Virus record (IMG/VR): IMGVR_UViG_3300042319_002138
Location: 1 to 64,000 of that record
DNA length: 64,000 bases
Direction: 5' to 3' (one strand)
In this document: positions 41,403 through 58,006 of the stretch, piece by piece
Layout: every line of letters starts with the position of its first letter
How positions within the stretch are numbered: position 1 is the stretch's first letter
Made by a program: the position numbers and the translations under genes
Notes under the pieces: generated by a model
The model's input: the letters and a program-made list of their open reading frames with translations, nothing else
Database searches by the model: none
What the model was told of the DNA's origin: nothing

Positions 41403-42215
41403 TTAGACTGTTTGTTCTTCTGCGTTATAAGTTAGACCTCTGTCTTGTTTAAAATAACATTCCTTTTTAGCAGTATTAAACCACCATCTAGCTTCAAGAG
41501 GGTCAATTTTATTTACACCATTATAGTATTCAAAAAACAAAGAAGAAGGTCTCATATTTGTTTTTTTGTAACCAATCTTAGGGATAGTCATAATTTTTTT
41601 ATCGTAGTAAGTCATTCTTAAGAAGAACTCATACACAAATTGTAGTCTAATACTAGATTTCAATTTACCTACAGATTCAAAAGATTCTTTTCTGTAAACT
41701 CCACCAGAGATTTGGAAACTTGGGTAGTTCAATAAAGCGTCATTATCTAAGAAACCAATCTTGTCTGAAAAATCTTTTGCCCATACAGGTTCATTTGTAA
41801 AATGTAAAAATCTACCTTCAACATTAGCGTCTAAAACAATAGGTAAAAATGCGTCTACATCATCATAATAGTTTGCGTATTGGTAAAAATTACTAAACCA
41901 AATTTTAGAATATTCATCATCCATTTCTAGAATACTAAACCACTCTGTTTCTACTTGTGAAACACCGTAGTTAATTTGTGAACAAAAATCAGTTTCACCA
42001 TCATTTTCAACAATAGTTAAAATATCTTTAATTTTTTCATCATAAGAATATTCTTCCACTGTTGTTTTTGCTTCACTACCTTTTGGTACTACAATAATAA
42101 CTTTTGTAGGTAATTCTTTTTGTTCTCTAAGACTAGCCATAGCTTTAGCAAAGTAGTCTTTCTCCTCTTCATTAATTTTATGTACAGGTACAATAACTGT
42201 TACTTTATTATCCAT
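41403..42215 (-). CDS. Glycosyltransferase family 2
   Basis: VTVIVPVH, N.G......WF..LEMDD. Confidence 0.75.
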   Translation of the reverse strand: MDNKVTVIVPVHKINEEEKDYFAKAMASLREQKELPTKVIIVVPKGSEAKTTVEEYSYDEKIKDILTIVENDGETDFCSQINYGVSQVETEWFSILEMDDEYSKIWFSNFYQYANYYDDVDAFLPIVLDANVEGRFLHFTNEPVWAKDFSDKIGFLDNDALLNYPSFQISGGVYRKESFESVGKLKSSIRLQFVYEFFLRMTYYDKKIMTIPKIGYKKTNMRPSSLFFEYYNGVNKIDPLEARWWFNTAKKECYFKQDRGLTYNAEEQTV

Positions 42216-43308
42216 TTGTTTCTTCTGTTTTAGTTTCTGTTATTACTTCTGGTTCAACAAATTGTGTCAAACTAGATTTAAATTCCTCAATAGCTTTATT
42301 AGTTAACTTTTCAAAATAATTTTTGATTGTTTCTTTTTGTTCTTCAGGAGTATATTTTTTGTTAGTTTCTTCCATTTCAGTGTACAATTCTTGTGGTTCT
42401 AAATCTTCCAACCAAGCTTGAACGTAGTTACCTAAAATATCTACAATATTGTTAACATTGTTAGTCCACATTCCGTTTCTATCTGTCATCCATTCAGGTA
42501 CCATGTTAGGAACTTTACCAATAACAGGTACACCACATCTCATAGATTCTAATGGGAAAGTACCAAAGCCTGAAATATCGTCAACCCAAATAGATACACA
42601 AGATTCAGCTAAATTTTCAGCAAATTTTTCTCTAGACATACCTCTTAAATCTCTAAAAGAAACCCATTTTAAGTGTGGGTATTTAATGTAAAAAGCCTTA
42701 AAGATTTTTAGAGTATCTCTTTGGTCTCTAGTGTTAATCGTTACAATAGGTTTTCTAGGTTCTTCCGATTTTTTAAAGTAACTTGGGATTGAAATTGATG
42801 TTGAATCAACTTCGATTGTTGGGTTATTGAACAGGGTGTTAATGTATTCTTTTTGGTTTGCTGATGTTGTAATAACATCTCTTACTTTATAGTCAGCCCA
42901 AGTTTTACCTGGTTCTAACATCTCAAAAATATAATCATATGCCTGTGACATAATCATTTTTCTACATGGTAATCCTTTAATTTGTTCTAATACATTAGCA
43001 AAAATTTCAGGGATGATTACAAAATCACTACCACCAACTTTTAATTCGTTTCTTTCGATAGAAAGGTGTGGTAAATTACCATACTCTTCACCTAACCAAG
43101 AATTAACACTAGTATAATCATTTTTTTCATGTAAGATATAAGCTCTATATCCTAGTTCAGTTAAAACTTTTACGTGTTCATAAACGTTTGCTACTCCAGC
43201 CGTAGGAGCTCCTTTTGTGTCCATCGTAAAGAAATAAATACCAAAATCTTTTTTTGATAGTTTTTCGATGTTAGACTCAATTTGTTTTACAATTTCTAAT
43301 TTTTCCAT
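42208..43308 (-). CDS. Glycosyltransferase (GT-B/GT4-like)
   Basis: GFGTFPLESMRCGVPVIG. Confidence 0.7.
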   Translation of the reverse strand: MEKLEIVKQIESNIEKLSKKDFGIYFFTMDTKGAPTAGVANVYEHVKVLTELGYRAYILHEKNDYTSVNSWLGEEYGNLPHLSIERNELKVGGSDFVIIPEIFANVLEQIKGLPCRKMIMSQAYDYIFEMLEPGKTWADYKVRDVITTSANQKEYINTLFNNPTIEVDSTSISIPSYFKKSEEPRKPIVTINTRDQRDTLKIFKAFYIKYPHLKWVSFRDLRGMSREKFAENLAESCVSIWVDDISGFGTFPLESMRCGVPVIGKVPNMVPEWMTDRNGMWTNNVNNIVDILGNYVQAWLEDLEPQELYTEMEETNKKYTPEEQKETIKNYFEKLTNKAIEEFKSSLTQFVEPEVITETKTEETNG

Positions 43309-43309
43309 A

Positions 43310-43694: not shown

Positions 43695-44390
43695 TTATAA
43701 GGACCATTCTCCCTCACCACCCAATAAAATATTTTGAATATCTTTTAGTGTGGTAGAATCAATTTCTTTAATTGACTTAATATTAATATTAGATTGTACT
43801 AATAGTGTATTAAATTCTTTCTCTATTTTAACACAAACTTTTTTACTTGGTTTTGAATTGATTATTTCTGGGTGGTCCGTAATCATCACGTCAACGTAAT
43901 CCCATACTTTATTATATTCTGTAACAAATTTTATGTTAGGACAAGTGCATCTTGTTTTTGATAGAAAAAATAAAGTAGACGGAATAACTAACCCACCTTC
44001 TCTAGTTATGATAATAAATTCGTGTTGTGGATTATCTATAATTAATTTATTTAATGTCTCTACAGCAGAATTAACAACCTCATTTGCGTACCCAAAAATC
44101 TCTAATGTACATTTTTCATACATAAATTCTTCTAATGTAACTTGTTTTTTGACCGTAACTAATTTTGTATCTTCCTCTGATTCAAGAAAAGAATCTTCAT
44201 TAAAGTCAGGATTAAATTCTAATTCAGCTTGTTTAACTTCTTCTTCAGGAAACTTAATCCAATTTTCTAAATCATAGTCTTTAACCTCAATCGGTTCATT
44301 GTCTTCGTCAGCAAAATATTTTTGGAATGTGTTTTCTATTTGCCCAAAATAATCTCTTAATACATTATCTATTGATACCCCTATCTTCAT
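43695..44390 (-). CDS. 5'(3')-deoxyribonucleotidase/HAD-like protein
   Basis: IGVSIDNVLRD, ITR, DVMITD; first motif Asp appears replaced by Ser. Confidence 0.55.
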   Translation of the reverse strand: MKIGVSIDNVLRDYFGQIENTFQKYFADEDNEPIEVKDYDLENWIKFPEEEVKQAELEFNPDFNEDSFLESEEDTKLVTVKKQVTLEEFMYEKCTLEIFGYANEVVNSAVETLNKLIIDNPQHEFIIITREGGLVIPSTLFFLSKTRCTCPNIKFVTEYNKVWDYVDVMITDHPEIINSKPSKKVCVKIEKEFNTLLVQSNINIKSIKEIDSTTLKDIQNILLGGEGEWSL

Positions 44391-44537: not shown

Positions 44538-45293
44538 TTAATTTTTTCTTTTGGTGTTTGGTATTCTTCCCTCGGCAAGAGCCTTTTCGTAGTTATCAAT
44601 AATCTTAATAAGTAATGGGTCTCTAACAATATCATTTCTATCAAACTTAAAGTGAAACATTTGGTCATCTTCACCTAAAATTTCTTTAACAAAAAAGTCT
44701 AAAGCCACATACTTTTCATTGATGTCGTTTTGTCTTGAATCTCCAATAATAGTAATTTTAGAACCTTCACCAAAACGAGTAATTGTTGTCATTAATTGTT
44801 TAATGTCAGCGTTTTGCATTTCATCACAGATAATATATGAGTGTTTAAAAGTACGACCCCTCATGTAAGCAATGGGTTCAAATTTAATAGTGCCGTTGTC
44901 AATTAACATTTTAAGTGTTCTACCGTCCATCATCTCAATTAAATTATCTAAAAAAGATTCCATAAATGGTTGTACTTTATCTTTTTCAGAACCAGGTAAA
45001 AACCCTAAGTCTTCACCAGAAGTCTCAAGAGGCTTCACTAAAACTATTCTTTTAACTTCACCCTTTTGTAATGCTTTAACTGCTGCCCAACAAGCGGTAA
45101 ATGTTTTAGATGTTCCTGGAGGGCCGACAATTGTAGAGATTCTAGAATCTTTTATACCATTAAAAAGTTCGTATTGTTTTTCTGATAATTTAACATTTTT
45201 ATAGGAACCAAATTCTTTATTAATTGATTCGTTGTTTAAATACTCATCATAAACCTCTTGTGTATTAATTTTACGTTTTTTTTGATTTGTCAT
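44538..45293 (-). CDS. phoH: PhoH-like ATPase
   Basis: GPPGTSKT, LGFLPG, YMRGRTF, DEMQN, GDSRQ.D, DIVR. Confidence 0.9.
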   Translation of the reverse strand: MTNQKKRKINTQEVYDEYLNNESINKEFGSYKNVKLSEKQYELFNGIKDSRISTIVGPPGTSKTFTACWAAVKALQKGEVKRIVLVKPLETSGEDLGFLPGSEKDKVQPFMESFLDNLIEMMDGRTLKMLIDNGTIKFEPIAYMRGRTFKHSYIICDEMQNADIKQLMTTITRFGEGSKITIIGDSRQNDINEKYVALDFFVKEILGEDDQMFHFKFDRNDIVRDPLLIKIIDNYEKALAEGRIPNTKRKN

Positions 45294-45329: not shown

Positions 45330-46265
45330 TTACTTCCTAATTTTATTATAGTTACCCTCAAACCATTCTATAGTTTCTTTTAAACCTTCATATAAAGGTG
45401 TGAATTTAAAATTTGGTAAATAATTTTTAATTTTACTATTGTCGCTTGGTTTTCTAAATTGTCCGTCTGGTTTTGAGGTATCCCATATAACCTCACCCTT
45501 AAAATTCATAATTTCAACAATTACGTCAACAATTTCTTTAATCGATATTTCTTCGGATGTCGATAAAATTATTGGTTCGTTTTCAGTGTAATTATTTAAA
45601 ACCCATTCAGATAAAATGGCAACATCTTTATTGTATATAAATTCCCTTAATGGTTTACCTGAACCCCATATAGTTAAAGGTGTTTTAGTTTCTCTAGCAA
45701 TATAACATTTATGTATTATGGAAGGAATTACATGTCCGTTTTCAATATCAAAATTATCATTTATACCATATATGTTTGTTGGTATAACTGATTTATAATT
45801 TAATCCATATTGTTCTTTGTAAGCTCTTATTTGAATGTCAGCCATTCTTTTAGAGTAAGCGTAAGCATCATTAGAAAAATGTGGTGGACCTAAATGTATT
45901 TTATTCTCTGTTAAGGGATACTCAACGTTGTCAGGAAAAACACATGTTGAAAGGAAAACAACTAAATCTTTTATGTTGTGTTTTCTACATGATTCAATAA
46001 CATTTGTATTTATCATGATGTTATCATAAAAAAATTCTCCCTTATATCTCATGTTTCCACCAACGCCACCTACTTTAGCTGCGGTATGGATAACCTTATC
46101 AACAACAAATTCTTTTTGTATTTCTTTATTTGTATAAAAAGAAAAAATTTCGTCAACAGATTTTTGGTCTCTTAAATCACAAACTTTAGAATTTAAGGCA
46201 ATTAAATTACCTTTAAACTGTGAACCCACCAAGCCACTTTGTCCTGTAACTAATAATCTACCCAT
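45330..46265 (-). CDS. fcl: GDP-L-fucose synthase
   Basis: GQSGLVG, AAKVGG, STCVFP, YAYSK, PTNIYG.NDNF, HVIP, WGSGKPLREF, KPDGQ. Confidence 0.92.
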   Translation of the reverse strand: MGRLLVTGQSGLVGSQFKGNLIALNSKVCDLRDQKSVDEIFSFYTNKEIQKEFVVDKVIHTAAKVGGVGGNMRYKGEFFYDNIMINTNVIESCRKHNIKDLVVFLSTCVFPDNVEYPLTENKIHLGPPHFSNDAYAYSKRMADIQIRAYKEQYGLNYKSVIPTNIYGINDNFDIENGHVIPSIIHKCYIARETKTPLTIWGSGKPLREFIYNKDVAILSEWVLNNYTENEPIILSTSEEISIKEIVDVIVEIMNFKGEVIWDTSKPDGQFRKPSDNSKIKNYLPNFKFTPLYEGLKETIEWFEGNYNKIRK

Positions 46266-47320
46266 TAAACATTTCTATTTCTCATAATACCTAGCATTAC
46301 CTCTGATGGTATGTCTAATATATTTTGTTCTATTTCATTCTCTTCTACTTTATAATGTTCTAACCAATATTCAATCATTTCATCTAACATTGTCTCAAAA
46401 GTATATTTTGGGTCCCAATTTAACTCATCTCTTAACTTACTTGAATCCCCCTTTAAATCATGTAATTCTTCAGGTCTAAAATGTTTATCATCAATAACAA
46501 CATATTTTCTAAAATCCAAGTTTAATTTGGAAAATGTGTATTCACATAATTCTTTTACTGAATGTGAAACACCTGTAGAACATACATAATCATCTGGTTT
46601 ATCAGATTGTAACATTAACCACATAGCTTCTACATAATCTTTTGCGTGACCCCAATCTCTGGTAGCATCAAGATTACCTAAATGTAAATTATTTTGTAAT
46701 CCTAATTTAATTCTAACTGCAGCTTTAACAACTTTATTAGTTACAAAATTAGTTCCTCTTCTAGGGGACTCGTGATTAAATAATATACCGTTCCATATTT
46801 TCATACCATATGAATTTCTATAATTCTTACAAATGTTGTAAGAAAAAACTTTAGCACAACCATATGGTGATACAGGATTCAATGGTGTCGTTTCTCTTTG
46901 ATACCCATCATCGTCTATTGAATTACCAAACATTTCTGAAGATGATGCTTGATAAATTTTTGAATGTGGTGAAACCATCCTTACAGCTTCAAGTAAATTT
47001 AATGTACCTAAACCAGTAGCGTTAGCCGTGTATATTGGTTGGTCAAAACTAACTCTAACATGGGATTGTGCTGCTAGATTATATATTTCATCAGGTTGTA
47101 CTTTTTGTAAAACTCTAACTAAAGATGCCATATCAGTTAAATCAGCGTACTCTAAATTAATTTTACCTTCTGAGAGTAGGTGTTCTATTCTAGTAGATTG
47201 TGTTTCAGATACAGAATTTCTTTTTACGGTACCCCATATCTCATAATCTTTATTCAACAAAAATTCTGCTAAATAAGAACCGTCTTGTCCGTTAATACCC
47301 GTTATTAAAACTTTTTTCAT
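46265..47320 (-). CDS. gmd: GDP-mannose 4,6-dehydratase
   Basis: GINGQDGSYLAE, NLAAQSHV, QASSSE, SPYGCAK, NHESPRRG, RDWGHA. Confidence 0.95.
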   Translation of the reverse strand: MKKVLITGINGQDGSYLAEFLLNKDYEIWGTVKRNSVSETQSTRIEHLLSEGKINLEYADLTDMASLVRVLQKVQPDEIYNLAAQSHVRVSFDQPIYTANATGLGTLNLLEAVRMVSPHSKIYQASSSEMFGNSIDDDGYQRETTPLNPVSPYGCAKVFSYNICKNYRNSYGMKIWNGILFNHESPRRGTNFVTNKVVKAAVRIKLGLQNNLHLGNLDATRDWGHAKDYVEAMWLMLQSDKPDDYVCSTGVSHSVKELCEYTFSKLNLDFRKYVVIDDKHFRPEELHDLKGDSSKLRDELNWDPKYTFETMLDEMIEYWLEHYKVEENEIEQNILDIPSEVMLGIMRNRNV

Positions 47321-47353
47321 TATTAATTTTTTGTGTTAATATATTTATTATTT

Positions 47354-48112
47354 TTAAAAATTCATTTTATTGTTTATTACGGATGTTAACCTATCCCAAA
47401 AACTCGTATAAATTAACGATAACTCAAAATTATTTTTAATAAAAGGTAACATGTTATTATATGTCTCAAGATTTAATTTTTCAATTATTCCCTTAAATTC
47501 ATCGACACTGTTAAACTCTAAAAAACCCCTCTTATCAAAATAATTACCAATATTACCACACCCCCAATATATTGGTACGGTTCCAGTAACTAAACAATCG
47601 ATTATTTTTTCTGTAAACAAATTATCTATTTTTTCATTTTCTATAATTAAAGAAAACATATAATCTTTAAATGCGGTAATTTTATTCTCAACTGGATTAT
47701 ATCCATGACCATAAGTGTCCATAGGGGTTAACTTACTATCAATTATTTTATGTCGAAGTTGATGTCCCTCAGTTTGACGTTTGTTGGAAGCTACAATTGA
47801 TAAAATTTTTGTTTTATCATGAATACCCCTATCAGATTCATTTATCCAACAAGAACCAAAAGGAAATAATTTACTATTTTCACATTCTTCTAATACTTTT
47901 GTATTCCAACTTAAAATTAAATCAAAATTATTTTTAAATGAGGGTATTTGGTTTACTATCCCCATGATAGAGGGTGGTTCTATTTGGACCATGACTTTAT
48001 AATCAGCATTTTCATCGTAATTAAAACTATCAAAAGAAATACTAACTTTTTTATTAAAATATAAATCGTTATGTAGAGTACCAAAAGTAGAAGCTTTTAT
48101 ATTATTTTCCAT
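47354..48112 (-). CDS. GT10-like alpha-1,3/4-fucosyltransferase
   Basis: YMFSLIIEN.....FTEKI.D....GTVPIYWG. Confidence 0.75.
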   Translation of the reverse strand: MENNIKASTFGTLHNDLYFNKKVSISFDSFNYDENADYKVMVQIEPPSIMGIVNQIPSFKNNFDLILSWNTKVLEECENSKLFPFGSCWINESDRGIHDKTKILSIVASNKRQTEGHQLRHKIIDSKLTPMDTYGHGYNPVENKITAFKDYMFSLIIENEKIDNLFTEKIIDCLVTGTVPIYWGCGNIGNYFDKRGFLEFNSVDEFKGIIEKLNLETYNNMLPFIKNNFELSLIYTSFWDRLTSVINNKMNF

Positions 48113-48127
48113 TTTTTTTACAAATGC

Positions 48128-48658: not shown

Positions 48659-48662
48659 ATTT

Positions 48663-49967: not shown

Positions 49968-49997
49968 ATTTAATTTTTTAATTGTTTATTATTATTA

Positions 49998-50594: not shown

Positions 50595-50656
50595 TTTTAT
50601 AATATATAAAAATTTTAGTTAAATTAAAGTCTAACTAATTTTTATTTTTTACATTT

Positions 50657-51415
50657 CTAACACCATTCATTCGGTATTAAATCATGAGTATTGTGGTTTA
50701 TTGCCTTACCGAACCAATTTTTTGGTGTTATAACCATTTTGTTAGGGTTTGTGTTTAACCATGCACCCCACCATGAAAAAGATGAATTAGCTATTATATT
50801 ATTTTTACATAGACTCATTAACCATAAATCGATATAGTCTTTTTCGCCCTCAATAAAAATAAATTGTGGTCCTTTAAAATTTTTTTTACACCATTCTATG
50901 TCGTTTGAAAAAACTAAAAAAATTGTTTTTTTATCAAAATTAGAAATAGCTTGATTATAATATTCGATACTACAAATTGGGTGGTGTTCTGGTAATCCTA
51001 AATAATCACCTCTTCTAATATGAATTGAACAGGTTTTTTCGTTTAAAAATTTACCATATTTTTCATATATTTCTTCTTTAGATTTTTCATCTATCGCATA
51101 TAAATTTAATATTTGTTCACGATTATGTAAAAAATATTTTTCACTTTGAAAGTATCCGTACAACTTTAAATTTGTTGTGTACGGTATTTTAGAATAATGA
51201 AAAAAAGGTTCTTGGTAAGTTTTATTACAATTTGTAATACCGAATTTTACGAATCTAAAAATATTTTCAGTGTAAGAATTTATTGGTTGGTGAGCATTTG
51301 AAGCTTGGGTTACTTCGAATACGGATTCGTCATTATTATCTAAAGACAATGAATAAGTTGTAGCTATTTGGAACATCTTGTTACCTAACCCACCTATTAA
51401 GTTACACGTTATCAT
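50657..51415 (-). CDS. GT11 alpha-1,2-fucosyltransferase
   Basis: GGLGN.MFQ, GYFQSEKYF, HIRRGDY, NSSFSWW. Confidence 0.9.
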   Translation of the reverse strand: MITCNLIGGLGNKMFQIATTYSLSLDNNDESVFEVTQASNAHQPINSYTENIFRFVKFGITNCNKTYQEPFFHYSKIPYTTNLKLYGYFQSEKYFLHNREQILNLYAIDEKSKEEIYEKYGKFLNEKTCSIHIRRGDYLGLPEHHPICSIEYYNQAISNFDKKTIFLVFSNDIEWCKKNFKGPQFIFIEGEKDYIDLWLMSLCKNNIIANSSFSWWGAWLNTNPNKMVITPKNWFGKAINHNTHDLIPNEWC

Positions 51416-52094
51416 TATATTTTTGTTTTACGTAATCTATTTCTTCATTTATATTTTTATTGTATCTACTACTAATTTGAAATTGGTGTATTCTATTACT
51501 TATTAAAATATCACTAACTACCTGTGGTAAACCATATTTTTTATATAAATGGTAATAATACTCACAATCCATTAACATTGTTAAATTCTCATCAAAAAAA
51601 ACAATTTCTTCATTAATAAAGGAAAGTACTGAAGGTGAACTAATTGTGTTAACACCATACAATATTTGGTCATTCCAAGAAGGTACCATTTCCCTGTTAA
51701 AAGTAAGACCATCATTTGTGTGATTACAACCATTAACTAACCATTTACAGTTGGTTTCTTTAAATGTATTGTGTATTATTTGTAATGCGTTATCGTCCAC
51801 AAATAGGTCATCCTGGAACATTACTTTTATAATTTCCCCATCAGCATTTTTTATGGCTATATTTGTATTAGCAGGACCATTGCCTCGGTCATACTCATTT
51901 TTAATATAAACAATATCAAAAAATATATTATAAGATTCTACAAGTTTTTTGATTCCATCATCTACACTATGGTCAGAAATAATAACGTTAAAATTTTTAA
52001 AACTTTGTGTTTTTATAGAATTTAATAAAGCCTTTAAATAATGCAGACCATTACCATACTGTTCCCAAGTGGGTATGCAAATACTTATTTTCAT
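51402..52094 (-). CDS. Glycosyltransferase family 2
   Basis: ISICIPT, SDHS, FQDD; start at 52094. Confidence 0.8.
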   Translation of the reverse strand: MKISICIPTWEQYGNGLHYLKALLNSIKTQSFKNFNVIISDHSVDDGIKKLVESYNIFFDIVYIKNEYDRGNGPANTNIAIKNADGEIIKVMFQDDLFVDDNALQIIHNTFKETNCKWLVNGCNHTNDGLTFNREMVPSWNDQILYGVNTISSPSVLSFINEEIVFFDENLTMLMDCEYYYHLYKKYGLPQVVSDILISNRIHQFQISSRYNKNINEEIDYVKQKYNDNV

Positions 52095-52849
52095 ACCCAA
52101 CGCCAAGTTTTAATATGATTAGTTAATTGTTCTCTATTCATATTTCTTATTTTATGGAATTCTTGCCCATTAGAATGAAAAAGTGGGTTACTATCAGAAC
52201 TATTGTGTGTCCTACTATGGGTTAAATGATAAAGAGGACCCTCAACTCTACATAAACTATAACCCATAATTTCTATACGTACAACTCTTTCCCAATCTTC
52301 ATGACCCCATGAAACAAAATTTTCATTTTCTAAACCAATTTGTGAGTATCTTTCTTTGTTAAAGAAAAAAGCTCCACCAACAGAATTAGGGTTAAATAGA
52401 GTACACTGACTTAAATCAATGTCTTGAATATTATCAGAATCAACTAAATGGAATTGATTTTTTTGTACGTCATAGAATTTTCCTGAGTAAGGGAATACCA
52501 TATCACAACCTTCTAAAATTTTATTTCTAGATTCTAGGTATTGGTCAACTGTGAAAATAACATCAACATCATAGTTAACAACAATGTTTGTTTCACACAT
52601 TTTAGTCATATCATTCAACAATCTTGTTCTATGAAAAAGTCTTTCATCGTTTTTTTCAAAAACATATTTTATTTTATCTGAAACTGATTTTACAAATTCT
52701 TCATTAGAATTTTCATCACTTTCTAATACTATAATATTAGTATCAAAGTTCCTTAATAAAAAACTTATTGAAGTTTTAAAATTATCTCTTCTATCCTGTG
52801 AATCAAATCTAACAGGAACAATAAATGTAACGTCTTTAAAATCTATCAT
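52091..52849 (-). CDS. Glycosyltransferase (GT2/GT7-C galactosyltransferase-like)
   Basis: YDVD, ENENFVSWGHED. Confidence 0.75.
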   Translation of the reverse strand: MIDFKDVTFIVPVRFDSQDRRDNFKTSISFLLRNFDTNIIVLESDENSNEEFVKSVSDKIKYVFEKNDERLFHRTRLLNDMTKMCETNIVVNYDVDVIFTVDQYLESRNKILEGCDMVFPYSGKFYDVQKNQFHLVDSDNIQDIDLSQCTLFNPNSVGGAFFFNKERYSQIGLENENFVSWGHEDWERVVRIEIMGYSLCRVEGPLYHLTHSRTHNSSDSNPLFHSNGQEFHKIRNMNREQLTNHIKTWRWV

Positions 52850-54387
52850 CCTCTATTTTGATATATTGCTTGTAATTGTTGTTGTACCTGTTCTGGTGTT
52901 GCTAAAGGTGTTTCTGTGGGTGTAATCCCATGTTTATTTTTGTACCACATAGTACCTTTTCTAAAATTCTCATTCCATGTTGGTGTTCTAGCAATAGTAC
53001 TTTCAGCTATTGAGTTCGGTATATCAGTTAAGTAATTCCAACTTTCATGAATATCGGCAAAATACCAAAAAGCTGGGTGATACATTTTTTTAATAGCTTG
53101 GTATGTGTGTTCAACATGTTCCCACGCGTTTTTAAACATTGGGTCAAAACCACCGATATCTTCTAATACTTTTCTTTGGTAATAAGAAAATGCCCCAACA
53201 CAATTAGGGTACAATGCTATTTTTACACCCGTATTTAATACATCACCATTTTCATAAGGGATAATCATCCTAGGGTTAGGTTTACCATCTACATCCTCTC
53301 TTTCAGATAAATCTGTAAATCCCTTACTACCAATCTTATTAGCTGGTCCGTGTAAAGCAAAATTTAAATGTTTAATACCAGAAATTAATGAGTGTTTAAT
53401 ATATTCTTTAAAAACATTTTCATCTTTAATTAAGATATCATCTTCCATAATAAAAATATGTTCACAACCTTTTTCCATTAGATAATTAATAGCTGTTGTT
53501 TTTGCTGCACCTACAGACATATTTGTTTTATGCTGTATGATATGTGCATCTTCAGGGTAAGCGTCTTCAGGGTAAGGTGTACCGTCATTTACAATAACAA
53601 AATTCTTAACCCATTTTGGAACTGTAAAAGCACTTTGCCTAATTCTATGTTCAGCATTATAAGTAACCATACCAAAACCAATAGAATCAGGGTCAAACTC
53701 TAACTTTTCTTCAAAAGTTTTATTATTTGATAGTCTTACAGGTAAGTTATCTTTATATCTTTCTTCAAATTTAATTTTATTATCTTCCCATTGTTGATTG
53801 GTCATACCTACTGATAAATGGGTTACTCTAATTAAAGTCGTTAAACCAATTTTAACACCATCTAAATAATTAGGGAAACAAAAAGCTAAATCATAAAAAT
53901 GGAATCCATCAAAAGATTCGTCAAAAGTATGTTTAATTTTTGTTTTATCTATAGCAAAAAACAAACCATCTAAAACAACCATTTCAGTAATTTTATTACC
54001 CTGGTCTTTAGAATAATAGTTAGTCCATTTTTTACCTTCGTGTTGGTGTGATACAATACCATTCATAGATTCTTTCAAAGTCCACCATCTACCGTCTAAT
54101 AAATCTGTTGTACCAGCTATCCCTAAAATTCCATATTCAGGATTTTTATTAAATAGTTTTTGTAGTTTTTGGCCCCAACCCTTAGTTTCAAAAATTAAAT
54201 CATCGTGACAAAAAACAACTATATTATTTTTAGCCATATCTAATCCTTTATTATAAGCTTGTGGTAATGACATTTCACCATCATTAACAATTTGTATAAC
54301 ATCTACGTTATGAATACCACAAGTTTTTTTAATTTGTTCGATATACTCAGGGTTATCTTTTCTTGTTGAATATACTACTGTAATCAT
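52846..54387 (-). CDS. Two-domain GT-A glycosyltransferase
   Basis: FCHDD...LDG.F...FHFYD domain followed by a second GT2 domain (VNDG, MEDD). Confidence 0.8.
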   Translation of the reverse strand: MITVVYSTRKDNPEYIEQIKKTCGIHNVDVIQIVNDGEMSLPQAYNKGLDMAKNNIVVFCHDDLIFETKGWGQKLQKLFNKNPEYGILGIAGTTDLLDGRWWTLKESMNGIVSHQHEGKKWTNYYSKDQGNKITEMVVLDGLFFAIDKTKIKHTFDESFDGFHFYDLAFCFPNYLDGVKIGLTTLIRVTHLSVGMTNQQWEDNKIKFEERYKDNLPVRLSNNKTFEEKLEFDPDSIGFGMVTYNAEHRIRQSAFTVPKWVKNFVIVNDGTPYPEDAYPEDAHIIQHKTNMSVGAAKTTAINYLMEKGCEHIFIMEDDILIKDENVFKEYIKHSLISGIKHLNFALHGPANKIGSKGFTDLSEREDVDGKPNPRMIIPYENGDVLNTGVKIALYPNCVGAFSYYQRKVLEDIGGFDPMFKNAWEHVEHTYQAIKKMYHPAFWYFADIHESWNYLTDIPNSIAESTIARTPTWNENFRKGTMWYKNKHGITPTETPLATPEQVQQQLQAIYQNRG

Positions 54388-54564: not shown

Positions 54565-55056
54565 TTACTTCTCAATTTCAATAATATTAATTGGTTCCTC
54601 ACAATAAACTGATAAGTGACATGAAGCCTTAATAGCTTCTTTTACTGAATTACCCAAGTATAATGCTGCTAAAGCAAAATCCATACCAGCACCAATAGCT
54701 GTATAATCAGTTACTTCTTTACACCAAAAACCTTCCATTACAAAAGCTTTTTTCTCAAAAACAATAACATATTGGTTAGTTAATTTTGTTTCTTCTGTTT
54801 TATTTCTATACCAATCTTGGAACTCTGACATAAACTCTACCATTCCCTCCACAGAAGCTTCTCTAGGCTTTCTTGTTTTAGAATAAATTAGAAATAATCC
54901 ACCTTCTTGTGCATCACCACAATCACCGATAACCATTCCGTTTACTTCATTAAGTTTTGCTAATTTATCTTTTTCTTGTGTCCAACCAGATACTAGGATA
55001 CTATCCGCTCCAATTGTAATTTTTTTATTTGTTACTCTTACTGCTACTACTGACAT
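54565..55056 (-). CDS. Ntn-hydrolase, HslV/proteasome-beta-like peptidase
   Basis: N-terminal SVVAV...IGADS, AKL, AIGAG..FALAAL. Confidence 0.65.
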   Translation of the reverse strand: MSVVAVRVTNKKITIGADSILVSGWTQEKDKLAKLNEVNGMVIGDCGDAQEGGLFLIYSKTRKPREASVEGMVEFMSEFQDWYRNKTEETKLTNQYVIVFEKKAFVMEGFWCKEVTDYTAIGAGMDFALAALYLGNSVKEAIKASCHLSVYCEEPINIIEIEK

Positions 55057-55058
55057 GT

Positions 55059-55391
55059 TTAAGCTTTTGTTGTTATGTTATAAATCCCACTATTTAAAGT
55101 TACACTATCCGTCCCTGATGTGGTATACCATACTTGTGGGTAAAAGGGTGGCTGAGGACTTGTATATGGGTTAACCTCATTTGGTACCCCAGTTGGTATA
55201 AACGGATTTATTGGTGTGTGTGGTGTGATTGTTATAGGGTTTCTCCATTCAGTAATTTTAGTTACCTTTAATGTAAATTCTCTCCACAAACCACTTGGTA
55301 ATAAAGAATTTAGTTCTTCATAAAAATCATGAAGGTTAACATCTTCCTCTATTGTAATTGTTTTATTAATTGTATCTAATTGAATTTTCAT
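55059..55391 (-). CDS. Hypothetical protein
   Basis: 110 aa with Pro-rich tail. Confidence 0.6.
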   Translation of the reverse strand: MKIQLDTINKTITIEEDVNLHDFYEELNSLLPSGLWREFTLKVTKITEWRNPITITPHTPINPFIPTGVPNEVNPYTSPQPPFYPQVWYTTSGTDSVTLNSGIYNITTKA

Positions 55392-55987
55392 TACTTTGTA
55401 CCTGTAGAACCAAATCCACCCTCACCACGTTCAGATTCGTTTATTTCCATAACTTCGATTAAATCACCGTAGTCTGAACTAATTCTATGTGCCACAACAC
55501 CTTGTGCGATTCTTTCACCTCTTTCCCAAGTAAATTCCTCATTACTAATGTTAACCAAAAGAACTTTAATTTCACCACGGTATCCTGTATCTACAGTTCC
55601 AGGTGAGTTTAATACGGTAATACCGTTTTTATAAGCCAACCCACTTCTAGGTCTAATTTGTAATTCATAACCATCAGGTAATTCAAAATACAAACCTGTA
55701 CCAACAAGTTTTCTTTCTAATGGTTTTAAAGAACCACCTTCATTTGCTCTTAAATCAAAACCTGAATCTCCCTCTTTTGCATAGACAGGATTTTTATTTT
55801 CGGATTTATTAATATAATTAATTTTTACTTTTGTTTTAACTGGTTCATTAACTTTTTTATTATCGTATTCTTGTACTGATTCAGCTAATTTAATCGCCAT
55901 TAAAATTTCTTGTCTAGTTGCTTCAGGTAACATATCCATTTCAGCTAGAGCTTTTAATTCTTCTATTTGTTGTGTAATTTCTCCCAT
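55391..55987 (-). CDS. dut: dUTPase (trimeric)
   Basis: GFDL, RPRSGLA, GTVD.GYRGE, RIAQ, RGEGGFGSTG. Confidence 0.95.
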   Translation of the reverse strand: MGEITQQIEELKALAEMDMLPEATRQEILMAIKLAESVQEYDNKKVNEPVKTKVKINYINKSENKNPVYAKEGDSGFDLRANEGGSLKPLERKLVGTGLYFELPDGYELQIRPRSGLAYKNGITVLNSPGTVDTGYRGEIKVLLVNISNEEFTWERGERIAQGVVAHRISSDYGDLIEVMEINESERGEGGFGSTGTK

Positions 55988-56700
55988 TATTTAAGATTAT
56001 TTAATTTTGTTATTATATCTACAAGAGCCTTAACGTCTCTTTCACAATATTCTTTAATTTCTTCATGATTACCCTCCCAATAATTGGTAGTAACGCTATC
56101 CCCTTTAACATCACCGTTTTTAGGTGATTCAATATCTAATGATGAACAGATTAAATCTAAAGAACCCAAAGACCAATTGTTACCAAATTGCCAAACTTCT
56201 TTAGTATCAACAACTCTTAAATCCCATGGTTTAGTTTCATGTGTTGGGAACAGTTTAGGTGGTTTCATTCCATTAATAAAAAATCTTTTACCTAAAAATG
56301 GGATATCAAATATTTTAATACTTTGACCACAAAGGTCAAACCCAAGAGGTTCAATTTTATTAAAGATTTTTCTAACTTCAGTTAAAATATGTAATTCATC
56401 TTCACCGTAAAAAGATTCAAATCTAACCTCACCTTCTTTAGTTACAAATGCCATAGAAACACAAGCTACCTTACCATATTCAGGGAAGAATGCCGCAGTT
56501 TGTCTATAAACTTCTTGGTGAATTTCTTTTAATGACATAGATTCAGAGTCTATTCTAGTTTCATCGGTAACTTTTTTTCTAAACGAGTCATAGTAAGATT
56601 CCCACATCTTTAATTTATCTTCAGGCATGTCGTATAAATCTTCATACTGACTTACTGATTCGATATCAAAAAATAATAATTTGTCTAATTTAAATTGCAT
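55987..56700 (-). CDS. DnaQ-like 3'-5' exonuclease (PolB-exo-like)
   Basis: FDIE, FDIPF, YCERDV. Confidence 0.8.
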   Translation of the reverse strand: MQFKLDKLLFFDIESVSQYEDLYDMPEDKLKMWESYYDSFRKKVTDETRIDSESMSLKEIHQEVYRQTAAFFPEYGKVACVSMAFVTKEGEVRFESFYGEDELHILTEVRKIFNKIEPLGFDLCGQSIKIFDIPFLGKRFFINGMKPPKLFPTHETKPWDLRVVDTKEVWQFGNNWSLGSLDLICSSLDIESPKNGDVKGDSVTTNYWEGNHEEIKEYCERDVKALVDIITKLNNLK

Positions 56701-58006
56701 TTGTATGTTCGATTAATTGTCCAACTTCTTTTTTATCATCTTTCAATATTGTTTTATAGAAAGATGCTCTTGTATGTGTAACTGTATCAATATGGTATTT
56801 ATCCTTAACCGTTTCATGTAAGTTATGTGACAATAACTCTACTAAACTCGGATTATCCTTTAATTTTTTGAGTGCTTTATACCAATCCTTATGATTTTTA
56901 CCTGTATCTACTAAAATTGCGTTACCCTTTTCATTAATACCACCACCATACTCTAACAAGTTTACACAATCTATTTGATAAGGTCCATAATTTTGTGCGA
57001 TTAAAGCTTTTTTATGGAAACCAGATTCAATAACTTTTAATTGTGATTTAACCTTATTAAATGTATGTTCTTTAAGTGGGGCCATTGATACATCAAATAG
57101 ATTGTAGTTTGATGCATAAGTGGTAATAGGTTTGGTCCAAACTCTTCTATATAATTCATTTAAATCGTTGTATTTTTTATCACTACTTTCATCATATTTT
57201 TTTATTTGATTCAAATAGTCACCTTCAAGTAATTTGTAATTTTTAGTAAACATTTCTTCATAACGAGCCCAAACACTTTCATGTGGTTCAATTTTTCTTG
57301 TTCTTTGTTGTCCTGTATTTCTATCAATTTCAGTAATACTACCTCTAGTATCAAAACCACAAAGTACCATTTGTGAATCCATTTTATTTTCACCTAAAAA
57401 TCTACTCACACCCTCTTCAATAATTTTTAAGTCATGTAAGTGAGATGAACCACCTAACCAACCTAATCTAATAAGTTTATCTGTTTTTTCGAGGTTTGGT
57501 GTAAATTGTTTTTCTGAAGGGTCAATTGCATTTGGTAATACAATTACATTTTTATTTAATTGGCTAATTTCTTTAGCAAAAATATCTGTAGTTGTAATTA
57601 CATAATTAACTCTCTTAATATTTTCTTTGATTTTTTTAGGTAATTCATCACTAACAATCATATGATATGCTGGGTGTTCTTTAGAAGGTAACCAGTAATC
57701 ATCTAAATCCATAACTGTTATAATACCCAATGAATGGATTTTGTCCAATATTTGAAACATATCTTCCATATATACTTGTCTTAACATACCGTCTTTAATC
57801 ATTGGTAACGTTCTATGGAAATGGACAATATCAAATTTTCGTAAAAAACTTTCGTCCCAACTAAAATTATCTGTACCTGCTGTAATAATTTCTACATAAA
57901 AATCGTCATTATACAATTCTTGTAGTTTCATATGTGGTTCTACTGAACGAAATTTAGATACCCCTGTTCTATCTGATGGGAATACTAAAACATTTATTTT
58001 ACTCAT
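56690..58006 (-). CDS. Glycosyltransferase (GT-B/GT4-like)
   Basis: DLDDYW, LPNAID, GWLGGSSH..DL, APL...FN..KS.LK.IE. Confidence 0.75.
   Translation of the reverse strand: MSKINVLVFPSDRTGVSKFRSVEPHMKLQELYNDDFYVEIITAGTDNFSWDESFLRKFDIVHFHRTLPMIKDGMLRQVYMEDMFQILDKIHSLGIITVMDLDDYWLPSKEHPAYHMIVSDELPKKIKENIKRVNYVITTTDIFAKEISQLNKNVIVLPNAIDPSEKQFTPNLEKTDKLIRLGWLGGSSHLHDLKIIEEGVSRFLGENKMDSQMVLCGFDTRGSITEIDRNTGQQRTRKIEPHESVWARYEEMFTKNYKLLEGDYLNQIKKYDESSDKKYNDLNELYRRVWTKPITTYASNYNLFDVSMAPLKEHTFNKVKSQLKVIESGFHKKALIAQNYGPYQIDCVNLLEYGGGINEKGNAILVDTGKNHKDWYKALKKLKDNPSLVELLSHNLHETVKDKYHIDTVTHTRASFYKTILKDDKKEVGQLIEHTNAI

What the first reader, a model, noticed from the sequence alone, without database searches (positions are those of the whole stretch)
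41403..58006. Phage-encoded fucosylation and methylated-glycan pathway
Seen: gmd and fcl (GDP-mannose to GDP-L-fucose), GT10-like and GT11 fucosyltransferases, at least six further glycosyltransferase genes and three methyltransferases, all co-oriented. No flippase, polymerase or priming transferase is evident. Known: GT10 and GT11 build Lewis/H-type fucosyl linkages, and Bacteroidota O-glycosylate proteins with fucose-containing glycans. Inference: virion-protein glycosylation or host-receptor masking (superinfection exclusion). DNA hypermodification is an alternative given the neighbouring dUTPase, exonuclease and polymerase.
Basis: partly seen in the sequence, partly recalled or inferred. 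Interest (0 to 1): 0.62.

Follow-up and report, generated by a model that had tools for sequence, protein, structure and literature searches.

The report
Phage fucosylated-glycan gene island
A roughly 300-kb lake-water phage that probably infects Bacteroidota carries its own enzymes for making GDP-fucose and building a fucose-rich, methylated sugar chain; similar gene sets are known in large cyanophages, and what the sugar chain is attached to is still unknown.

Summary
On the minus strand of 41403-58006 lie gmd, fcl, a GT11 and a GT10-like fucosyltransferase (signature motifs intact), six further glycosyltransferases and three methyltransferases (one weak). PhoH, dUTPase, an exonuclease and an HslV-like peptidase lie among them.

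- **Transcription unit:** the block looks like one unit, from a strong terminator at 58057-58079 to a sigma-factor-like gene at 40620-41402.
- **Second island:** more glycan genes, including a complete GT10, lie just past the window (contig 64397-70399).
- **No membrane steps:** all products are predicted soluble. No priming transferase or flippase candidate is found in this phage, and neither priming family in near-complete relatives.
- **Host:** canonical TTTG-N19-TAnnTTTG promoters and a CHU_C protein point to Bacteroidota.
- **Lineage pattern:** the 80 IMG/VR contigs kept (of at least 593 hits) mostly share the gene order. The 438-aa glycosyltransferase is as conserved as PolB; a low-GC variable cassette follows.
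- **DNA hypermodification disfavoured:** no hydroxymethylase, TET or C5-methylase in about 263 kb. Relatives' ThyA is td-like and dispensable.

The acceptor stays unresolved: virion proteins about 0.4, host envelope glycans about 0.33. Large cyanomyoviruses already carry gmd, fcl and GT10/GT11 clusters, so this is a new member of a known kind.

The parts
58057..58079 (-). Intrinsic terminator (9-bp stem, 5 GC pairs, T-run) that closes the upstream unit, just before the first glycosyltransferase gene
   Evidence: A terminator-like stem-loop stands at the same place in 19 of 37 relatives examined.
58022..58029 (-). Promoter-like -7 box TATATTGG, one mismatch from the Bacteroidota TAnnTTTG consensus, 23 nt before the ATG of the 438-aa glycosyltransferase
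   Evidence: Some relatives have TATATTTG or TATATTGG here. The late-type motif ATATTTAT is absent. The promoter role is inferred.
56690..58006 (-). Core GT-B (GT4-like) glycosyltransferase, 438 aa ('GT438')
   Evidence: phrog_7162 1.5e-39. AlphaFold2 pLDDT 89; Foldseek hits GlgM, PglA, BshA, MshA, PimA. More than 7,400 metagenomic homologues. 54-60% identical in five large relatives.
55987..56700 (-). PolB-exo2-type 3'-5' exonuclease; not a glycan gene, but syntenic across the lineage
   Evidence: PF10108 5.9e-12; present in 46 of 80 related loci.
55391..55987 (-). dUTPase; not a glycan gene
   Evidence: PF00692 6.9e-24; present in 74 of 80 related loci.
54565..55056 (-). HslV-family peptidase-like protein; not a glycan gene
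   Evidence: phrog_1040 1.1e-19.
52846..54387 (-). Core two-domain glycosyltransferase, 513 aa: confident N-terminal GT-A (GT2_5) plus an unresolved C-terminal 300 aa
   Evidence: PF13712 3.6e-26. AlphaFold2: residues 1-216 confident, 217-513 pLDDT below 50. It or its 524-aa paralogue occurs in 47 of 80 related loci.
52091..52849 (-). GT-A glycosyltransferase with a beta-1,4-galactosyltransferase-type C-terminal domain (GT2/GT7C)
   Evidence: PF02709 1.1e-8, PF10111 8.5e-8. Lies next to or near GT11 and GT10-like in relatives L027, L013 and L080.
51402..52106 (-). GT2 glycosyltransferase
   Evidence: PF00535 1.1e-11.
50657..51415 (-). GT11 alpha-1,2-fucosyltransferase-family enzyme
   Evidence: PF01531 5.2e-31; HIRRGDY and SSFSWWGAWL motifs conserved.
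49998..50594 (-). FkbM-family SAM methyltransferase (probable sugar O-methyltransferase)
   Evidence: PF05050 7.3e-13; TIGR01444 6.2e-19.
49341..49967 (-). Weak FkbM-like methyltransferase
   Evidence: PF05050 1.2e-3, below the cut-off; VEFGAGDG motif.
48663..49340 (-). Unknown 225-aa protein of a virus-only family, with a faint DUF4422 (glycosyltransferase-like) resemblance
   Evidence: No Pfam, PHROG or NCBIfam hit. Atlas feature hits 0.93-0.98 to viral clusters.
48128..48658 (-). Class I SAM methyltransferase
   Evidence: PF08241 1.1e-5, PF13489 1.4e-5.
47354..48112 (-). Compact GT10-like fucosyltransferase, 252 aa; FucT_N domain not detected
   Evidence: PF00852 5e-9; 2nzw 2e-8; FSLIIEN...FTEK motif.
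46265..47320 (-). GDP-mannose 4,6-dehydratase (gmd)
   Evidence: PF16363 1.2e-123; TIGR01472 409 bits against a cut-off of 415.
45330..46265 (-). GDP-L-fucose synthase (fcl / GMER)
   Evidence: NF047922 7.1e-70; 1.1e-89 to 4e5y with catalytic motifs aligned.
44538..45293 (-). PhoH-like ATPase; not a glycan gene
   Evidence: PF02562 4.7e-55.
43695..44390 (-). Conserved 231-aa protein, weak HAD/NT5C-like; role unknown
   Evidence: PF06941 4.3e-3, below the cut-off. Syntenic in L006, L007 and L026/L027.
42208..43308 (-). Probable GT-B (GT4-like) glycosyltransferase on the conserved right flank
   Evidence: PF00534 5.9e-4, below the cut-off; BshA 2e-4; PDB 8xsg 2e-5. 41-51% identical in L006, L007 and L026/L027.
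41403..42215 (-). GT2 glycosyltransferase, the last glycan gene of the unit
   Evidence: PF00535 1.8e-9.
40620..41402 (-). Sigma-factor-like protein at the end of the same co-oriented run; not a glycan gene
   Evidence: Atlas feature score 0.98-0.99 to viral 'RNA polymerase sigma factor family' clusters. No Pfam hit.
40597..40604 (-). First late-type promoter motif (ATATTTAT) downstream of the block; marks the next unit

Best explanation
Shown by sequence. The phage encodes a self-contained, entirely soluble glycan-building toolkit. Gmd and Fcl convert host GDP-mannose into GDP-L-fucose. Eight glycosyltransferases in the window and three more just past it include one GT11 and two GT10 fucosyltransferase-family enzymes and a GT7C-type (galactosyltransferase-like) enzyme. 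Together with three SAM methyltransferases they are expected to assemble a fucosylated, O-methylated oligosaccharide in the cytoplasm of an infected Bacteroidota cell.

The recurring trio of GT7C-like, GT11 and GT10-like genes suggests a Lewis/H-type fucosylated motif. That is an inference.

The island has two vertically inherited core glycosyltransferases (GT438 and the two-domain GT2_5 protein), a semi-conserved right flank, and a low-GC variable interior that differs between related phages.

Inferred. The core glycosyltransferases are as conserved as the DNA polymerase, and the phage supplies no membrane-bound priming, flipping or ligating step. The acceptor is therefore most likely a conserved phage-encoded macromolecule. 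The best candidate is one or more virion proteins glycosylated directly in the cytoplasm, as in chloroviruses and mycobacteriophages. The variable cassette would then give related phages different surface glycotypes.
For: - Enzyme identities and motifs.
- All cluster proteins lack predicted TM segments, and only two multi-TM ORFs exist in 226 kb.
- No PF02397 or PF00953 priming transferase in this phage, its 262.8-kb extension, or relatives 93-100% complete.
- GT438 has more than 7,400 homologues and is 54-60% identical in five large relatives, whose PolB is 50-70% and MCP 64-78% identical.
- Conserved order GT438, exonuclease, dUTPase, two-domain glycosyltransferase, then a variable cassette across the related IMG/VR loci.
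- Relatives' cassettes carry TylF O-methyltransferases, a DegT aminotransferase, an acyltransferase, an extra SDR and a HAD+NTP-transferase fusion.
- Variable genes are 22-28% GC against 30.8% for the genome.
- The second island follows a late-type promoter motif shared with portal, sheath and baseplate genes.
- From my own knowledge: the gene content (GMD, GMER, soluble glycosyltransferases, methyltransferase) parallels the chlorovirus capsid-glycosylation toolkit.
Against: - There is no direct evidence for any acceptor.
- The island sits in the replication module, not next to structural genes.
- Its own promoter looks host-sigma-type (early), not late.
- GT2, GT4, GT10 and GT11 enzymes normally act on lipid- or oligosaccharide-linked acceptors of envelope glycans.
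- The literature on the analogous cyanophage clusters favours host-surface modification (PMC9602691, PMC12801897).
- No RNA data exist for this phage.
- About 18-30% of the genome is unseen.
Confidence: 0.4

Rival explanations
1. Host-envelope remodelling. The soluble phage glycosyltransferases act at the inner face of the membrane on the host's own undecaprenyl-linked intermediates (LPS O-antigen, capsule, or the Bacteroidota general protein O-glycan). The host's priming enzyme, flippase and ligase or oligosaccharyltransferase finish the job. The changed surface blocks superinfection, stops progeny sticking to debris, or alters recognition by grazers.
For: - The families present are the usual envelope-glycan families, and bacterial GT11 homologues are often from Bacteroidota.
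- The first island has a host-sigma-like promoter and carries the sigma-factor-like gene, which suggests early expression.
- The phage encodes a PKD+CHU_C (T9SS-type) protein, so it places at least one product on the host surface.
- This is the published hypothesis for the analogous cyanophage clusters (PMC9602691, PMC12801897).
- The missing membrane steps could be supplied by the host.
Against: - Eleven glycosyltransferases plus a private GDP-fucose supply is far more than known seroconverting phages use (my own knowledge).
- Core glycosyltransferases as conserved as PolB across divergent phages are hard to reconcile with acceptors as variable as host surface glycans.
- Bacterial homologues are at most 47% identical, so there is no sign of recent capture from a host locus.
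Confidence: 0.33
2. DNA hypermodification. The glycosyltransferases decorate a modified base in phage DNA with a fucose-containing glycan to escape restriction.
For: - GT438 is tightly syntenic with the exonuclease, dUTPase and PolB across the lineage.
- Phage DNA glycosyltransferases are known to be recruited from LPS or teichoic-acid type enzymes and to add up to trisaccharides (10.1101/2023.12.21.572611; PMC13326640).
- Two Mom-family genes elsewhere in the genome show the phage does invest in DNA modification.
Against: - No ThyA-family hydroxymethylase or hydroxylase, ThyX, TET/JBP or C5-methyltransferase in 226 kb. No ThyA family in the contig extending coverage to about 263 kb.
- Relatives' ThyA is td-like: 55% to the Flavobacterium phage immuto thymidylate synthase and 33% to T4-type td.
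- That gene occupies a slot which holds a different gene in this phage, and it is absent from a 93%-complete relative that keeps the glycosyltransferases.
- The GT438 fold is generic GT4, not specifically T4 alpha- or beta-GT-like.
- GT10 and GT11 enzymes fucosylate sugars within oligosaccharides, which implies a glycan larger than any known on DNA.
Confidence: 0.07
3. Another soluble acceptor. The enzymes make a free or lipid-anchored fucosylated, methylated oligosaccharide (Nod-factor-like logic), or they glycosylate non-structural phage or host proteins, for example to disable a defence or alter signalling.
For: - The toolkit is entirely cytoplasmic and has no export genes.
- FkbM-type methyltransferases paired with fucosyltransferases recall Nod-factor decoration by NodZ and NoeI (my own knowledge).
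- S-SCSM1 carries a NodZ-like fucosyltransferase (PMC9602691).
Against: There is no backbone synthase such as a chitin-oligomer synthase and no exporter. The number of glycosyltransferases and the cassette-like variability are more typical of surface-exposed glycans.
Confidence: 0.15

Closest known systems
'LPS / cell-wall synthesis and modification' gene clusters of large T4-like cyanomyoviruses (P-SSM2, S-SKS1, S-CAM7, S-SCSM1, S-SCSM2R)
   Same: - Myovirus genomes above 200 kb from water carry gmd + fcl beside a GT11 alpha-1,2-fucosyltransferase and sometimes a GT10, plus many roughly 250-aa GT2-type enzymes.
- 103 deposited phage records match the GT11 and 259 match gmd.
- S-SCSM2R has 13 glycosyltransferases and also a mom gene (PMC12801897).
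- The function is unproven there too.
   Different: - Predicted host phylum is Bacteroidota, not cyanobacteria.
- Protein identity is only 34-52%.
- Here the island has a defined architecture: two core glycosyltransferases as conserved as PolB, a terminator and promoter boundary, and a low-GC variable interior.
- It carries three methyltransferases.
- No GT438 homologue was found in cyanophages at E below 1e-5.
Chlorovirus (PBCV-1) autonomous capsid glycosylation
   Same: A virus-encoded GMD and GDP-fucose synthase-type enzyme, several soluble glycosyltransferases and a sugar methyltransferase build a fucose-centred, methylated glycan in the cytoplasm without host membrane machinery (my own knowledge; review PMC4691112).
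   Different: That is a eukaryotic virus. The acceptor there, the major capsid protein, is proven; here it is not. No specific sequence relationship of the glycosyltransferases was shown.
Mycobacteriophage virion glycosylation (Che8, Corndog, Myrna; Freeman et al. 2023, as cited in PMC12619734)
   Same: Phage-encoded soluble glycosyltransferases modify phage proteins in the cytoplasm, and the glycans shield the virion.
   Different: - Those systems have few glycosyltransferases and act on C-terminal tails of capsid and tail-tube proteins.
- This island is about 12 kb from the capsid gene, on the opposite strand, inside the replication module.
- It is much larger and has its own nucleotide-sugar synthesis.
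Phage DNA glycosylation systems (T4 alpha/beta-GT on 5hmC; RB69/DLP3 arabinosyl-5hoC; MT+TET-dependent glycosyltransferase clusters)
   Same: Glycosyltransferase genes sit among replication and nucleotide-metabolism genes, and the enzymes are recruited from envelope-glycan families.
   Different: The defining base-activating enzyme (a ThyA homologue, or C5-methyltransferase plus TET) is absent here and is not linked to the glycosyltransferases in relatives.
Moraphages (freshwater jumbo phages predicted to infect Bacteroidota; PMC12619734)
   Same: - Habitat, size class (200-307 kb) and predicted host.
- The shared gene set: dUTPase, exonuclease, PhoH, ClpA-like ATPase, sigma factor, Hc1 histone-like protein, DnaJ.
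- That paper notes four core glycosyltransferase orthogroups.
   Different: That paper does not mention fucose, GDP-sugars or methyltransferases, nor the island architecture. Membership of this contig was judged by gene content only, not by phylogeny.

Membership tests
GDP-mannose 4,6-dehydratase (Gmd) | Full-length match to the family model above its cut-off | tested here: met
   PF16363 413 bits over positions 1-332 of 332. TIGR01472 gives 409 bits, just under its 415 equivalog cut-off.
GDP-L-fucose synthase (Fcl/GMER) | Full-length homology to solved enzymes, with the SDR Ser/Tyr/Lys triad and the Cys/His epimerase residues | tested here: met
   1.1e-89 to 4e5y over residues 3-311. LSTC, YaYSK and GHV stretches align with the enzyme's motifs.
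GDP-L-fucose synthase (Fcl/GMER) | NCBIfam equivalog score cut-off | tested here: not met
   NF047922 gives 236 bits against a cut-off of 500. The protein is closer to the eukaryote-type enzyme (304 bits) than to the E. coli one (174 bits).
GT11 alpha-1,2-fucosyltransferase | Pfam model above its cut-off, and the HxRRxD GDP-fucose motif | tested here: met
   PF01531 108 bits. HIRRGDY at residue 132, invariant across 12 homologues.
GT10 alpha-1,3/4-fucosyltransferase | C-terminal catalytic domain with the FxLxFEN...YxTEK motif | tested here: met
   PF00852 36.5 bits for 47354-48112 and 72 bits for the copy at contig 64397-65260. Motifs FSLIIEN..FTEK and FSLAFEN..YTSEK.
GT10 alpha-1,3/4-fucosyltransferase | N-terminal FucT_N acceptor domain | tested here: inconclusive
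   Not detected in the window copy (252 aa). Present in the second copy at 1.5e-21.
Wzx/Wzy- or ABC-dependent polysaccharide (O-antigen/capsule) locus | Priming phosphoglycosyl transferase, flippase or ABC exporter, polymerase or ligase | tested here: not met
   No TM segments in the block; only two multi-TM ORFs in 226 kb. PF02397 and PF00953 are absent in this phage and in relatives 93-100% complete. Wzx and Wzy models were not searched directly.
Phage DNA base-glycosylation system | Enzyme that creates the hydroxylated base (ThyA-family hydroxymethylase or hydroxylase, or C5-methyltransferase plus TET/JBP) | tested here: not met
   PF00303, PF02511, PF12851 and PF00145 are absent in 226 kb. 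PF00303 is absent in the extension contig. Relatives' ThyA is td-like and dispensable.
Phage DNA base-glycosylation system | Glycosylated nucleosides in virion DNA | not testable with these tools
   Needs LC-MS or native-DNA signal data.
Mycobacteriophage-type virion glycosylation | Glycosyltransferase genes associated with structural genes; glycans on C-terminal tails of capsid and tail-tube subunits | tested here: not met
   The island is in the replication module, on the opposite strand and about 12 kb from the MCP gene at 27752-29551. Glycan attachment itself cannot be tested here.
Chlorovirus-type autonomous glycosylation | Virus-encoded soluble glycosyltransferases plus GMD and GMER plus a sugar methyltransferase, with no membrane machinery | tested here: met
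   Gene content. The acceptor (capsid) is not testable.
Cyanomyovirus LPS/CWSM cluster | gmd + fcl with GT11 and/or GT10 and multiple small glycosyltransferases in a T4-like genome above 200 kb | tested here: met
   PMC9602691; PMC12801897. T4-like MCP, portal, TerL, gp25, gp32 and sheath.
Moraphage lineage | Shared core gene set and placement in the MCP/TerL/PolB trees | tested here: inconclusive
   Gene content matches. No tree was built, and that paper's genomes were not at hand.

The most novel reading that the evidence does not exclude
A whole, widespread lineage of freshwater Bacteroidota jumbo phages (at least 593 IMG/VR contigs) runs a virus-autonomous protein-glycosylation system. Two core glycosyltransferases would lay a conserved core on virion proteins, and an exchangeable low-GC cassette (fucosyl-, amino-, methyl-sugar enzymes) would give each phage its own virion glycotype. 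That would be the bacterial-virus counterpart of chlorovirus capsid glycosylation, and the first such system in phages of Gram-negative hosts.
Probability: 0.35. Interest if true: 0.75.

Novelty: new member of a known kind. Interest (0 to 1): 0.42.

Why it matters
Large aquatic phages repeatedly carry big glycan-synthesis clusters whose purpose has been unknown since the first cyanomyovirus genomes. This case adds three things.

- **A second host phylum.** The predicted host is Bacteroidota rather than cyanobacteria.
- **A clear architecture.** Core glycosyltransferases as conserved as the polymerase flank a variable low-GC cassette. That argues for a phage-encoded acceptor and gives concrete proteins to test.
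- **A weakened rival.** Sequence evidence disfavours DNA glycosylation.

If the acceptor is the virion, phage particles in lakes would carry variable fucosylated and methylated coats. That would bear on adsorption, grazing, particle stickiness and lectin-based sorting of viruses.

Tried and rejected
- **Nucleotide search.** Megablast of the region against deposited phages gave no match.
- **Expression.** No RNA runs hold the phage, so expression could not be checked.
- **Strain-level cassette swaps.** Contigs from four other lake runs tile 47300-53200 with identical sequence, and no replacement was seen.
- **GT438 fold.** It is a generic GT4/GT-B fold and gave no clue to the acceptor.
- **Two-domain glycosyltransferase.** The C-terminal 300 residues were not resolved (pLDDT below 50), so no fold search was run on it.
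- **Ser/Thr-rich tracts and the Bacteroidota D(S/T)(A/I/L/V/M/T) sequon.** Both are scattered over many tail and fibre proteins and do not discriminate.
- **Bacterial donors.** GT11 homologues are at most 47% identical and taxonomically mixed, so no donor or host locus could be named.
- **The 260-aa ORF at 40620-41402.** It was considered as another glycan gene and rejected; it looks like a sigma factor.
- **The 154-aa cytidylyltransferase-like ORF in the second island.** It was considered as a sugar-activating enzyme, but its best solved relatives are NMN adenylyltransferases.
- **An ARAGORN tRNA-Tyr call inside the 524-aa glycosyltransferase gene.** Treated as a false positive.
- **Tools deliberately not used.** Complex prediction was not used because I do not claim a specific enzyme-acceptor pair. 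The large representative-protein search was not used because family scans and the word search sufficed. No alternative genetic code was used.
- **Literature.** Freeman et al. 2023 could not be read.

Full report
**What the window is.** The window is the first 64 kb of a 226,303-bp IMG/VR viral contig. It is linear, and CheckV puts it at about 70% complete. The plus strand carries T4-type structural genes: large terminase 16741-18594, portal 18919-20823, and a gp23-like major capsid protein 27752-29551. The rest of the contig has a tail sheath, T4 baseplate and gp25, gp32, DnaB, a ribonucleotide reductase, ClpP, a sigma-70 factor, DnaJ and an Hc1 histone-like protein.

The nearest cultured capsid proteins belong to the Flavobacterium phage immuto and the Microcystis phage Mel-JY01, at about 42-44% identity. 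The same phage occurs in at least 24 lake-water metagenome runs from 2020 to 2024. An overlapping 195.7-kb contig extends coverage to about 262.8 kb.

The gene content matches the published 'moraphages': dUTPase, exonuclease, PhoH, ClpA-like ATPase, sigma factor, Hc1, DnaJ, freshwater origin and a size of 200-307 kb (PMC12619734). I did not build a tree.

**Host.** About 29 intergenic sites carry the canonical Bacteroidota sigma-A promoter architecture, TTTG followed about 19 nt later by TAnnTTTG. They sit mostly before small genes in the 200-225 kb region and before PolB. The phage also encodes a PKD + CHU_C protein with a type IX secretion C-terminal domain.

A second motif, ATATTTAT, lies about 22 nt before the start codons of the portal, sheath, baseplate and many other genes. 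It occurs in 38 of 93 upstream gaps, a 22-fold enrichment. I take it as the phage's late or middle promoter.

| Gene | Coordinates | Evidence |
|---|---|---|
| gmd | 46265-47320 | PF16363 1.2e-123 |
| fcl | 45330-46265 | 1e-89 to human GDP-L-fucose synthase, with S-x-C, Y-x3-K and G-H motifs aligned |
| GT11 | 50657-51415 | 5e-31; HIRRGDY and SSFSWWGAWL motifs |
| GT10-like | 47354-48112 | 5e-9; 2e-8 to H. pylori FucT; FxLxxEN...FTEK motif |
| GT2 | 41403-42215 | |
| GT4-like (weak) | 42208-43308 | |
| GT2 | 51402-52106 | |
| GT2/GT7C | 52091-52849 | |
| GT2_5, two domains | 52846-54387 | |
| GT438 | 56690-58006 | phrog_7162 1.5e-39; AlphaFold2 pLDDT 89; GT-B/GT4 fold |
| Class I methyltransferase | 48128-48658 | |
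| FkbM methyltransferase | 49998-50594 | |
| FkbM-like (weak) | 49341-49967 | |

The interval also holds genes that are not glycan genes: PhoH, a HAD-like protein, an HslV-like peptidase, dUTPase and an exonuclease. A 225-aa ORF at 48663-49340 belongs to a virus-only family with a faint glycosyltransferase-like resemblance.

**Boundaries and extent.** A strong terminator at 58057-58079 precedes GT438. Behind it lies a -7-like box, TATATTGG, rather than the late motif. A terminator-like stem-loop stands at this place in 19 of 37 relatives examined, and some of them have TATATTTG or TATATTGG behind it.

No clear terminator and no late motif follows until 40604. The unit therefore probably runs from 58006 to 40620 and ends with a sigma-factor-like gene. 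This suggests early, host-polymerase-driven expression, but that is an inference.

The glycan genes do not stop at the window. On the same strand of the contig lie:
- a complete GT10 at 64397-65260 (FucT_N 1.5e-21 plus GT10 6.5e-20);
- a DUF5672 + GT2 protein at 65244-66953;
- a GT2_5 + GT2 protein at 68825-70399.

Three other genes sit among them: DUF2061, an NMN-adenylyltransferase-like gene and an APS kinase-HAD fusion. This second island follows a late-type motif at 72923 and a lysozyme gene. It is missing from the close relatives L051 and L052, where the u474 and lysozyme homologues directly adjoin PolB. It is therefore a strain-specific insertion.

**No membrane steps.** None of the ORFs of the minus-strand block containing the first island has a predicted transmembrane segment. 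The only multi-TM ORFs in 226 kb are a 931-aa protein among the tail genes and a 3-TM protein. Neither priming-transferase superfamily (PF02397, PF00953) is present in this phage, in the extension contig, or in relatives that are 96%, 100% and 93% complete.

**Lineage-wide architecture.** GT438 has more than 7,400 metagenomic homologues and at least 593 IMG/VR loci. In the 80 best loci the gene order recurs: u131, u193, GT438, exonuclease (46 of 80), dUTPase (74 of 80), sometimes the HslV-like gene, then a roughly 510-550-aa two-domain GT2_5 protein (47 of 80). A run of roughly 200-450-aa genes follows, and it differs from phage to phage.

In the nearer relatives L006, L007, L013 and L026/L027 the far side is conserved too: gmd, fcl, PhoH, the HAD-like gene, u115, the GT4-like gene and the GT2. 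Their interiors carry TylF sugar O-methyltransferases, a DegT aminotransferase, a hexapeptide acyltransferase, an extra SDR and a HAD+NTP-transferase fusion.

The variable genes of this phage are 22-28% GC against 30.8% for the genome. Against five large relatives, GT438 is 54-60% identical, PolB 50-70% and MCP 64-78%. GT438 is therefore a vertically inherited core gene.

The GT7C-like, GT11 and GT10-like genes travel together in several relatives. This is the same enzyme trio that makes Lewis/H-type structures. The inference rests on family knowledge and was not tested.

**DNA hypermodification.** All known phage DNA glycosylation starts from a hydroxylated pyrimidine. The base is made either by a ThyA homologue or by a C5-methyltransferase plus a TET enzyme (10.1101/2023.12.21.572611; PMC13326640).

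- None of PF00303, PF02511, PF12851 or PF00145 is found in 226 kb.
- PF00303 is also absent from the contig that extends coverage to about 263 kb.
- Six relatives do have a ThyA-family gene. Its best matches are ordinary thymidylate synthases: 55% to the Flavobacterium phage immuto enzyme and 33-35% to T4-type td.
- In three of them it lies far from the glycosyltransferases, in a slot syntenic with window 9.1-10.4 kb. This phage carries a different gene there.
- It is absent from a 93%-complete relative that keeps GT438 and the cassette.
- No TET/JBP gene occurs in five large relatives.

I therefore rate DNA glycosylation at about 0.07. Two Mom-family genes at 183085-184612 of the contig show a separate, probable DNA-modification function.

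**What it most likely does.** It is secure that the island makes GDP-L-fucose from host GDP-mannose. It is also secure that the island encodes the enzymes to build a fucosylated, probably O-methylated oligosaccharide in the cytoplasm. The acceptor is not shown.

I favour a phage-encoded acceptor, most likely virion proteins, at about 0.4. The reasons:
- the core glycosyltransferases are as conserved as the polymerase across phages that must meet different host surfaces;
- the toolkit is complete for soluble chemistry and lacks every membrane step;
- the gene content mirrors the chlorovirus capsid-glycosylation kit;
- the cassette-like variability suggests an exposed glycan.

Remodelling of host envelope glycans through the host's own lipid-linked pathway is nearly as likely, at about 0.33. 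It fits the apparent early promoter, the usual roles of these families, and the published hypothesis for cyanophages. A free or lipid glycoconjugate, or non-structural protein targets, remain possible at about 0.15.

**Comparison with what is known, and novelty.** gmd, fcl, GT11 and occasionally GT10 genes are already annotated in about 100 deposited cyanomyovirus genomes. Examples are P-SSM2, S-SM2, S-CAM7, S-SKS1, S-SCSM1 and S-SCSM2R, the last with 13 glycosyltransferases. They are discussed there as cell-wall or LPS modification genes of unknown role.

The moraphage paper notes four core glycosyltransferase orthogroups. It does not mention fucose, GDP-sugars or methyltransferases. A full-text search for 'fucosyltransferase' together with 'jumbo phage' found nothing.

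The finding is therefore a new member of a known kind. The added value is the Bacteroidota host, the defined core-plus-cassette architecture across hundreds of contigs, and the evidence against the DNA route.

**Limits.**
- There are no expression data.
- About 18-30% of the genome is unseen.
- One glycosyltransferase and one methyltransferase call are below curated cut-offs.
- The promoter classes are inferred from motifs only.

Noticed in passing
contig G000 64397-72897 (just past the window; locus L032 397-8897), minus strand: A second glycan island: a complete GT10 (FucT_N + GT10), DUF5672+GT2, DUF2061, an NMN-adenylyltransferase-like gene, an APS kinase-HAD fusion and a GT2_5+GT2 protein. 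It lies downstream of a lysozyme gene and a late-type promoter motif at 72923. It is absent from close relatives, where the u474 and lysozyme homologues directly adjoin PolB.
   Followed up: partly
whole contig; examples at window 34184 and 63567 (minus strand), and G000 200229, 203550, 204976: About 29 intergenic sites have the canonical Bacteroidota promoter architecture (TTTG, about 19 nt, TAnnTTTG). Many lie only about 12 nt before the ATG of small genes, which implies near-leaderless early transcripts.
   Followed up: partly
window 18889, 20827, 23863, 29634, 36644, 40604, 60533 and about 45 more sites on the contig: The motif ATATTTAT sits about 22 nt upstream of start codons of the portal, sheath, baseplate and many other genes (22-fold enriched in upstream gaps). 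It is probably the promoter read by a phage sigma factor.
   Followed up: partly
window 40620-41402 (minus strand) and G000 160497-161312: The phage has two sigma-factor-type genes. One is recognisable only by language-model features and sits at the end of the glycan transcription unit. The other is a clear sigma-70 with regions r1_2, r2 and r4.
   Followed up: no
G000 183085-183816 and 183818-184612: Two adjacent Mom-family (PF25680) genes, a probable DNA adenine modification function unrelated to the glycan island.
   Followed up: no
G000 190658-192865 (minus strand): A 735-aa protein with PKD and CHU_C (type IX secretion C-terminal) domains behind a late-type promoter. It would be a phage protein exported to the Bacteroidota cell surface.
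   Followed up: no
G000 188908-200199, 206221-212674 and 220299-220691: About 24 tRNA genes in three clusters, and a tmRNA gene with tag peptide ANATVGHFVTEGATVAA.
   Followed up: no
window 9143-10376: In three relatives a td-like thymidylate synthase sits between the KTSC-domain gene and the 410-aa gene. Here that slot holds an unrelated 195-aa minus-strand ORF behind a late-type motif.
   Followed up: yes
window 6316-8799, window 54565-55056, G000 85975-86664: The phage carries its own proteostasis set: an 827-aa ClpA/ClpB-like ATPase (phrog_4871, 1.7e-264), an HslV-like peptidase and ClpP. DnaJ (177652-178584) and an FKBP-type isomerase add to it.
   Followed up: no
G000 193783-198164: A phage-encoded two-component system: a GAF/PAS histidine kinase, a second HATPase_c protein and a response regulator.
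   Followed up: no
G000 101837-107014: A 1,725-aa tail-region protein with a weak intein-splicing domain hit. PolB homologues in relatives G007 and G008 sit in open frames of 1,261-1,469 aa with split matches, which suggests inteins or insertions there.
   Followed up: no
G000 185533-186154: Two short ORFs (78 and 141 aa) match the Gp23 capsid family far from the real capsid gene. Relatives G006 and G007 also have extra short capsid-like fragments.
   Followed up: no
G000 173883-174068; 161312-162037; 151089-152240: An Hc1 histone-like protein, a SIR2-family protein and a DruA-family protein. Just beyond the contig end lies a weak Gad2-like gene. These are defence or counter-defence candidates.
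   Followed up: no
locus L032 5351-5446 (G000 69351-69446, minus strand): ARAGORN calls a 96-nt tRNA-Tyr inside the 524-aa glycosyltransferase ORF. It is probably a false positive.
   Followed up: no
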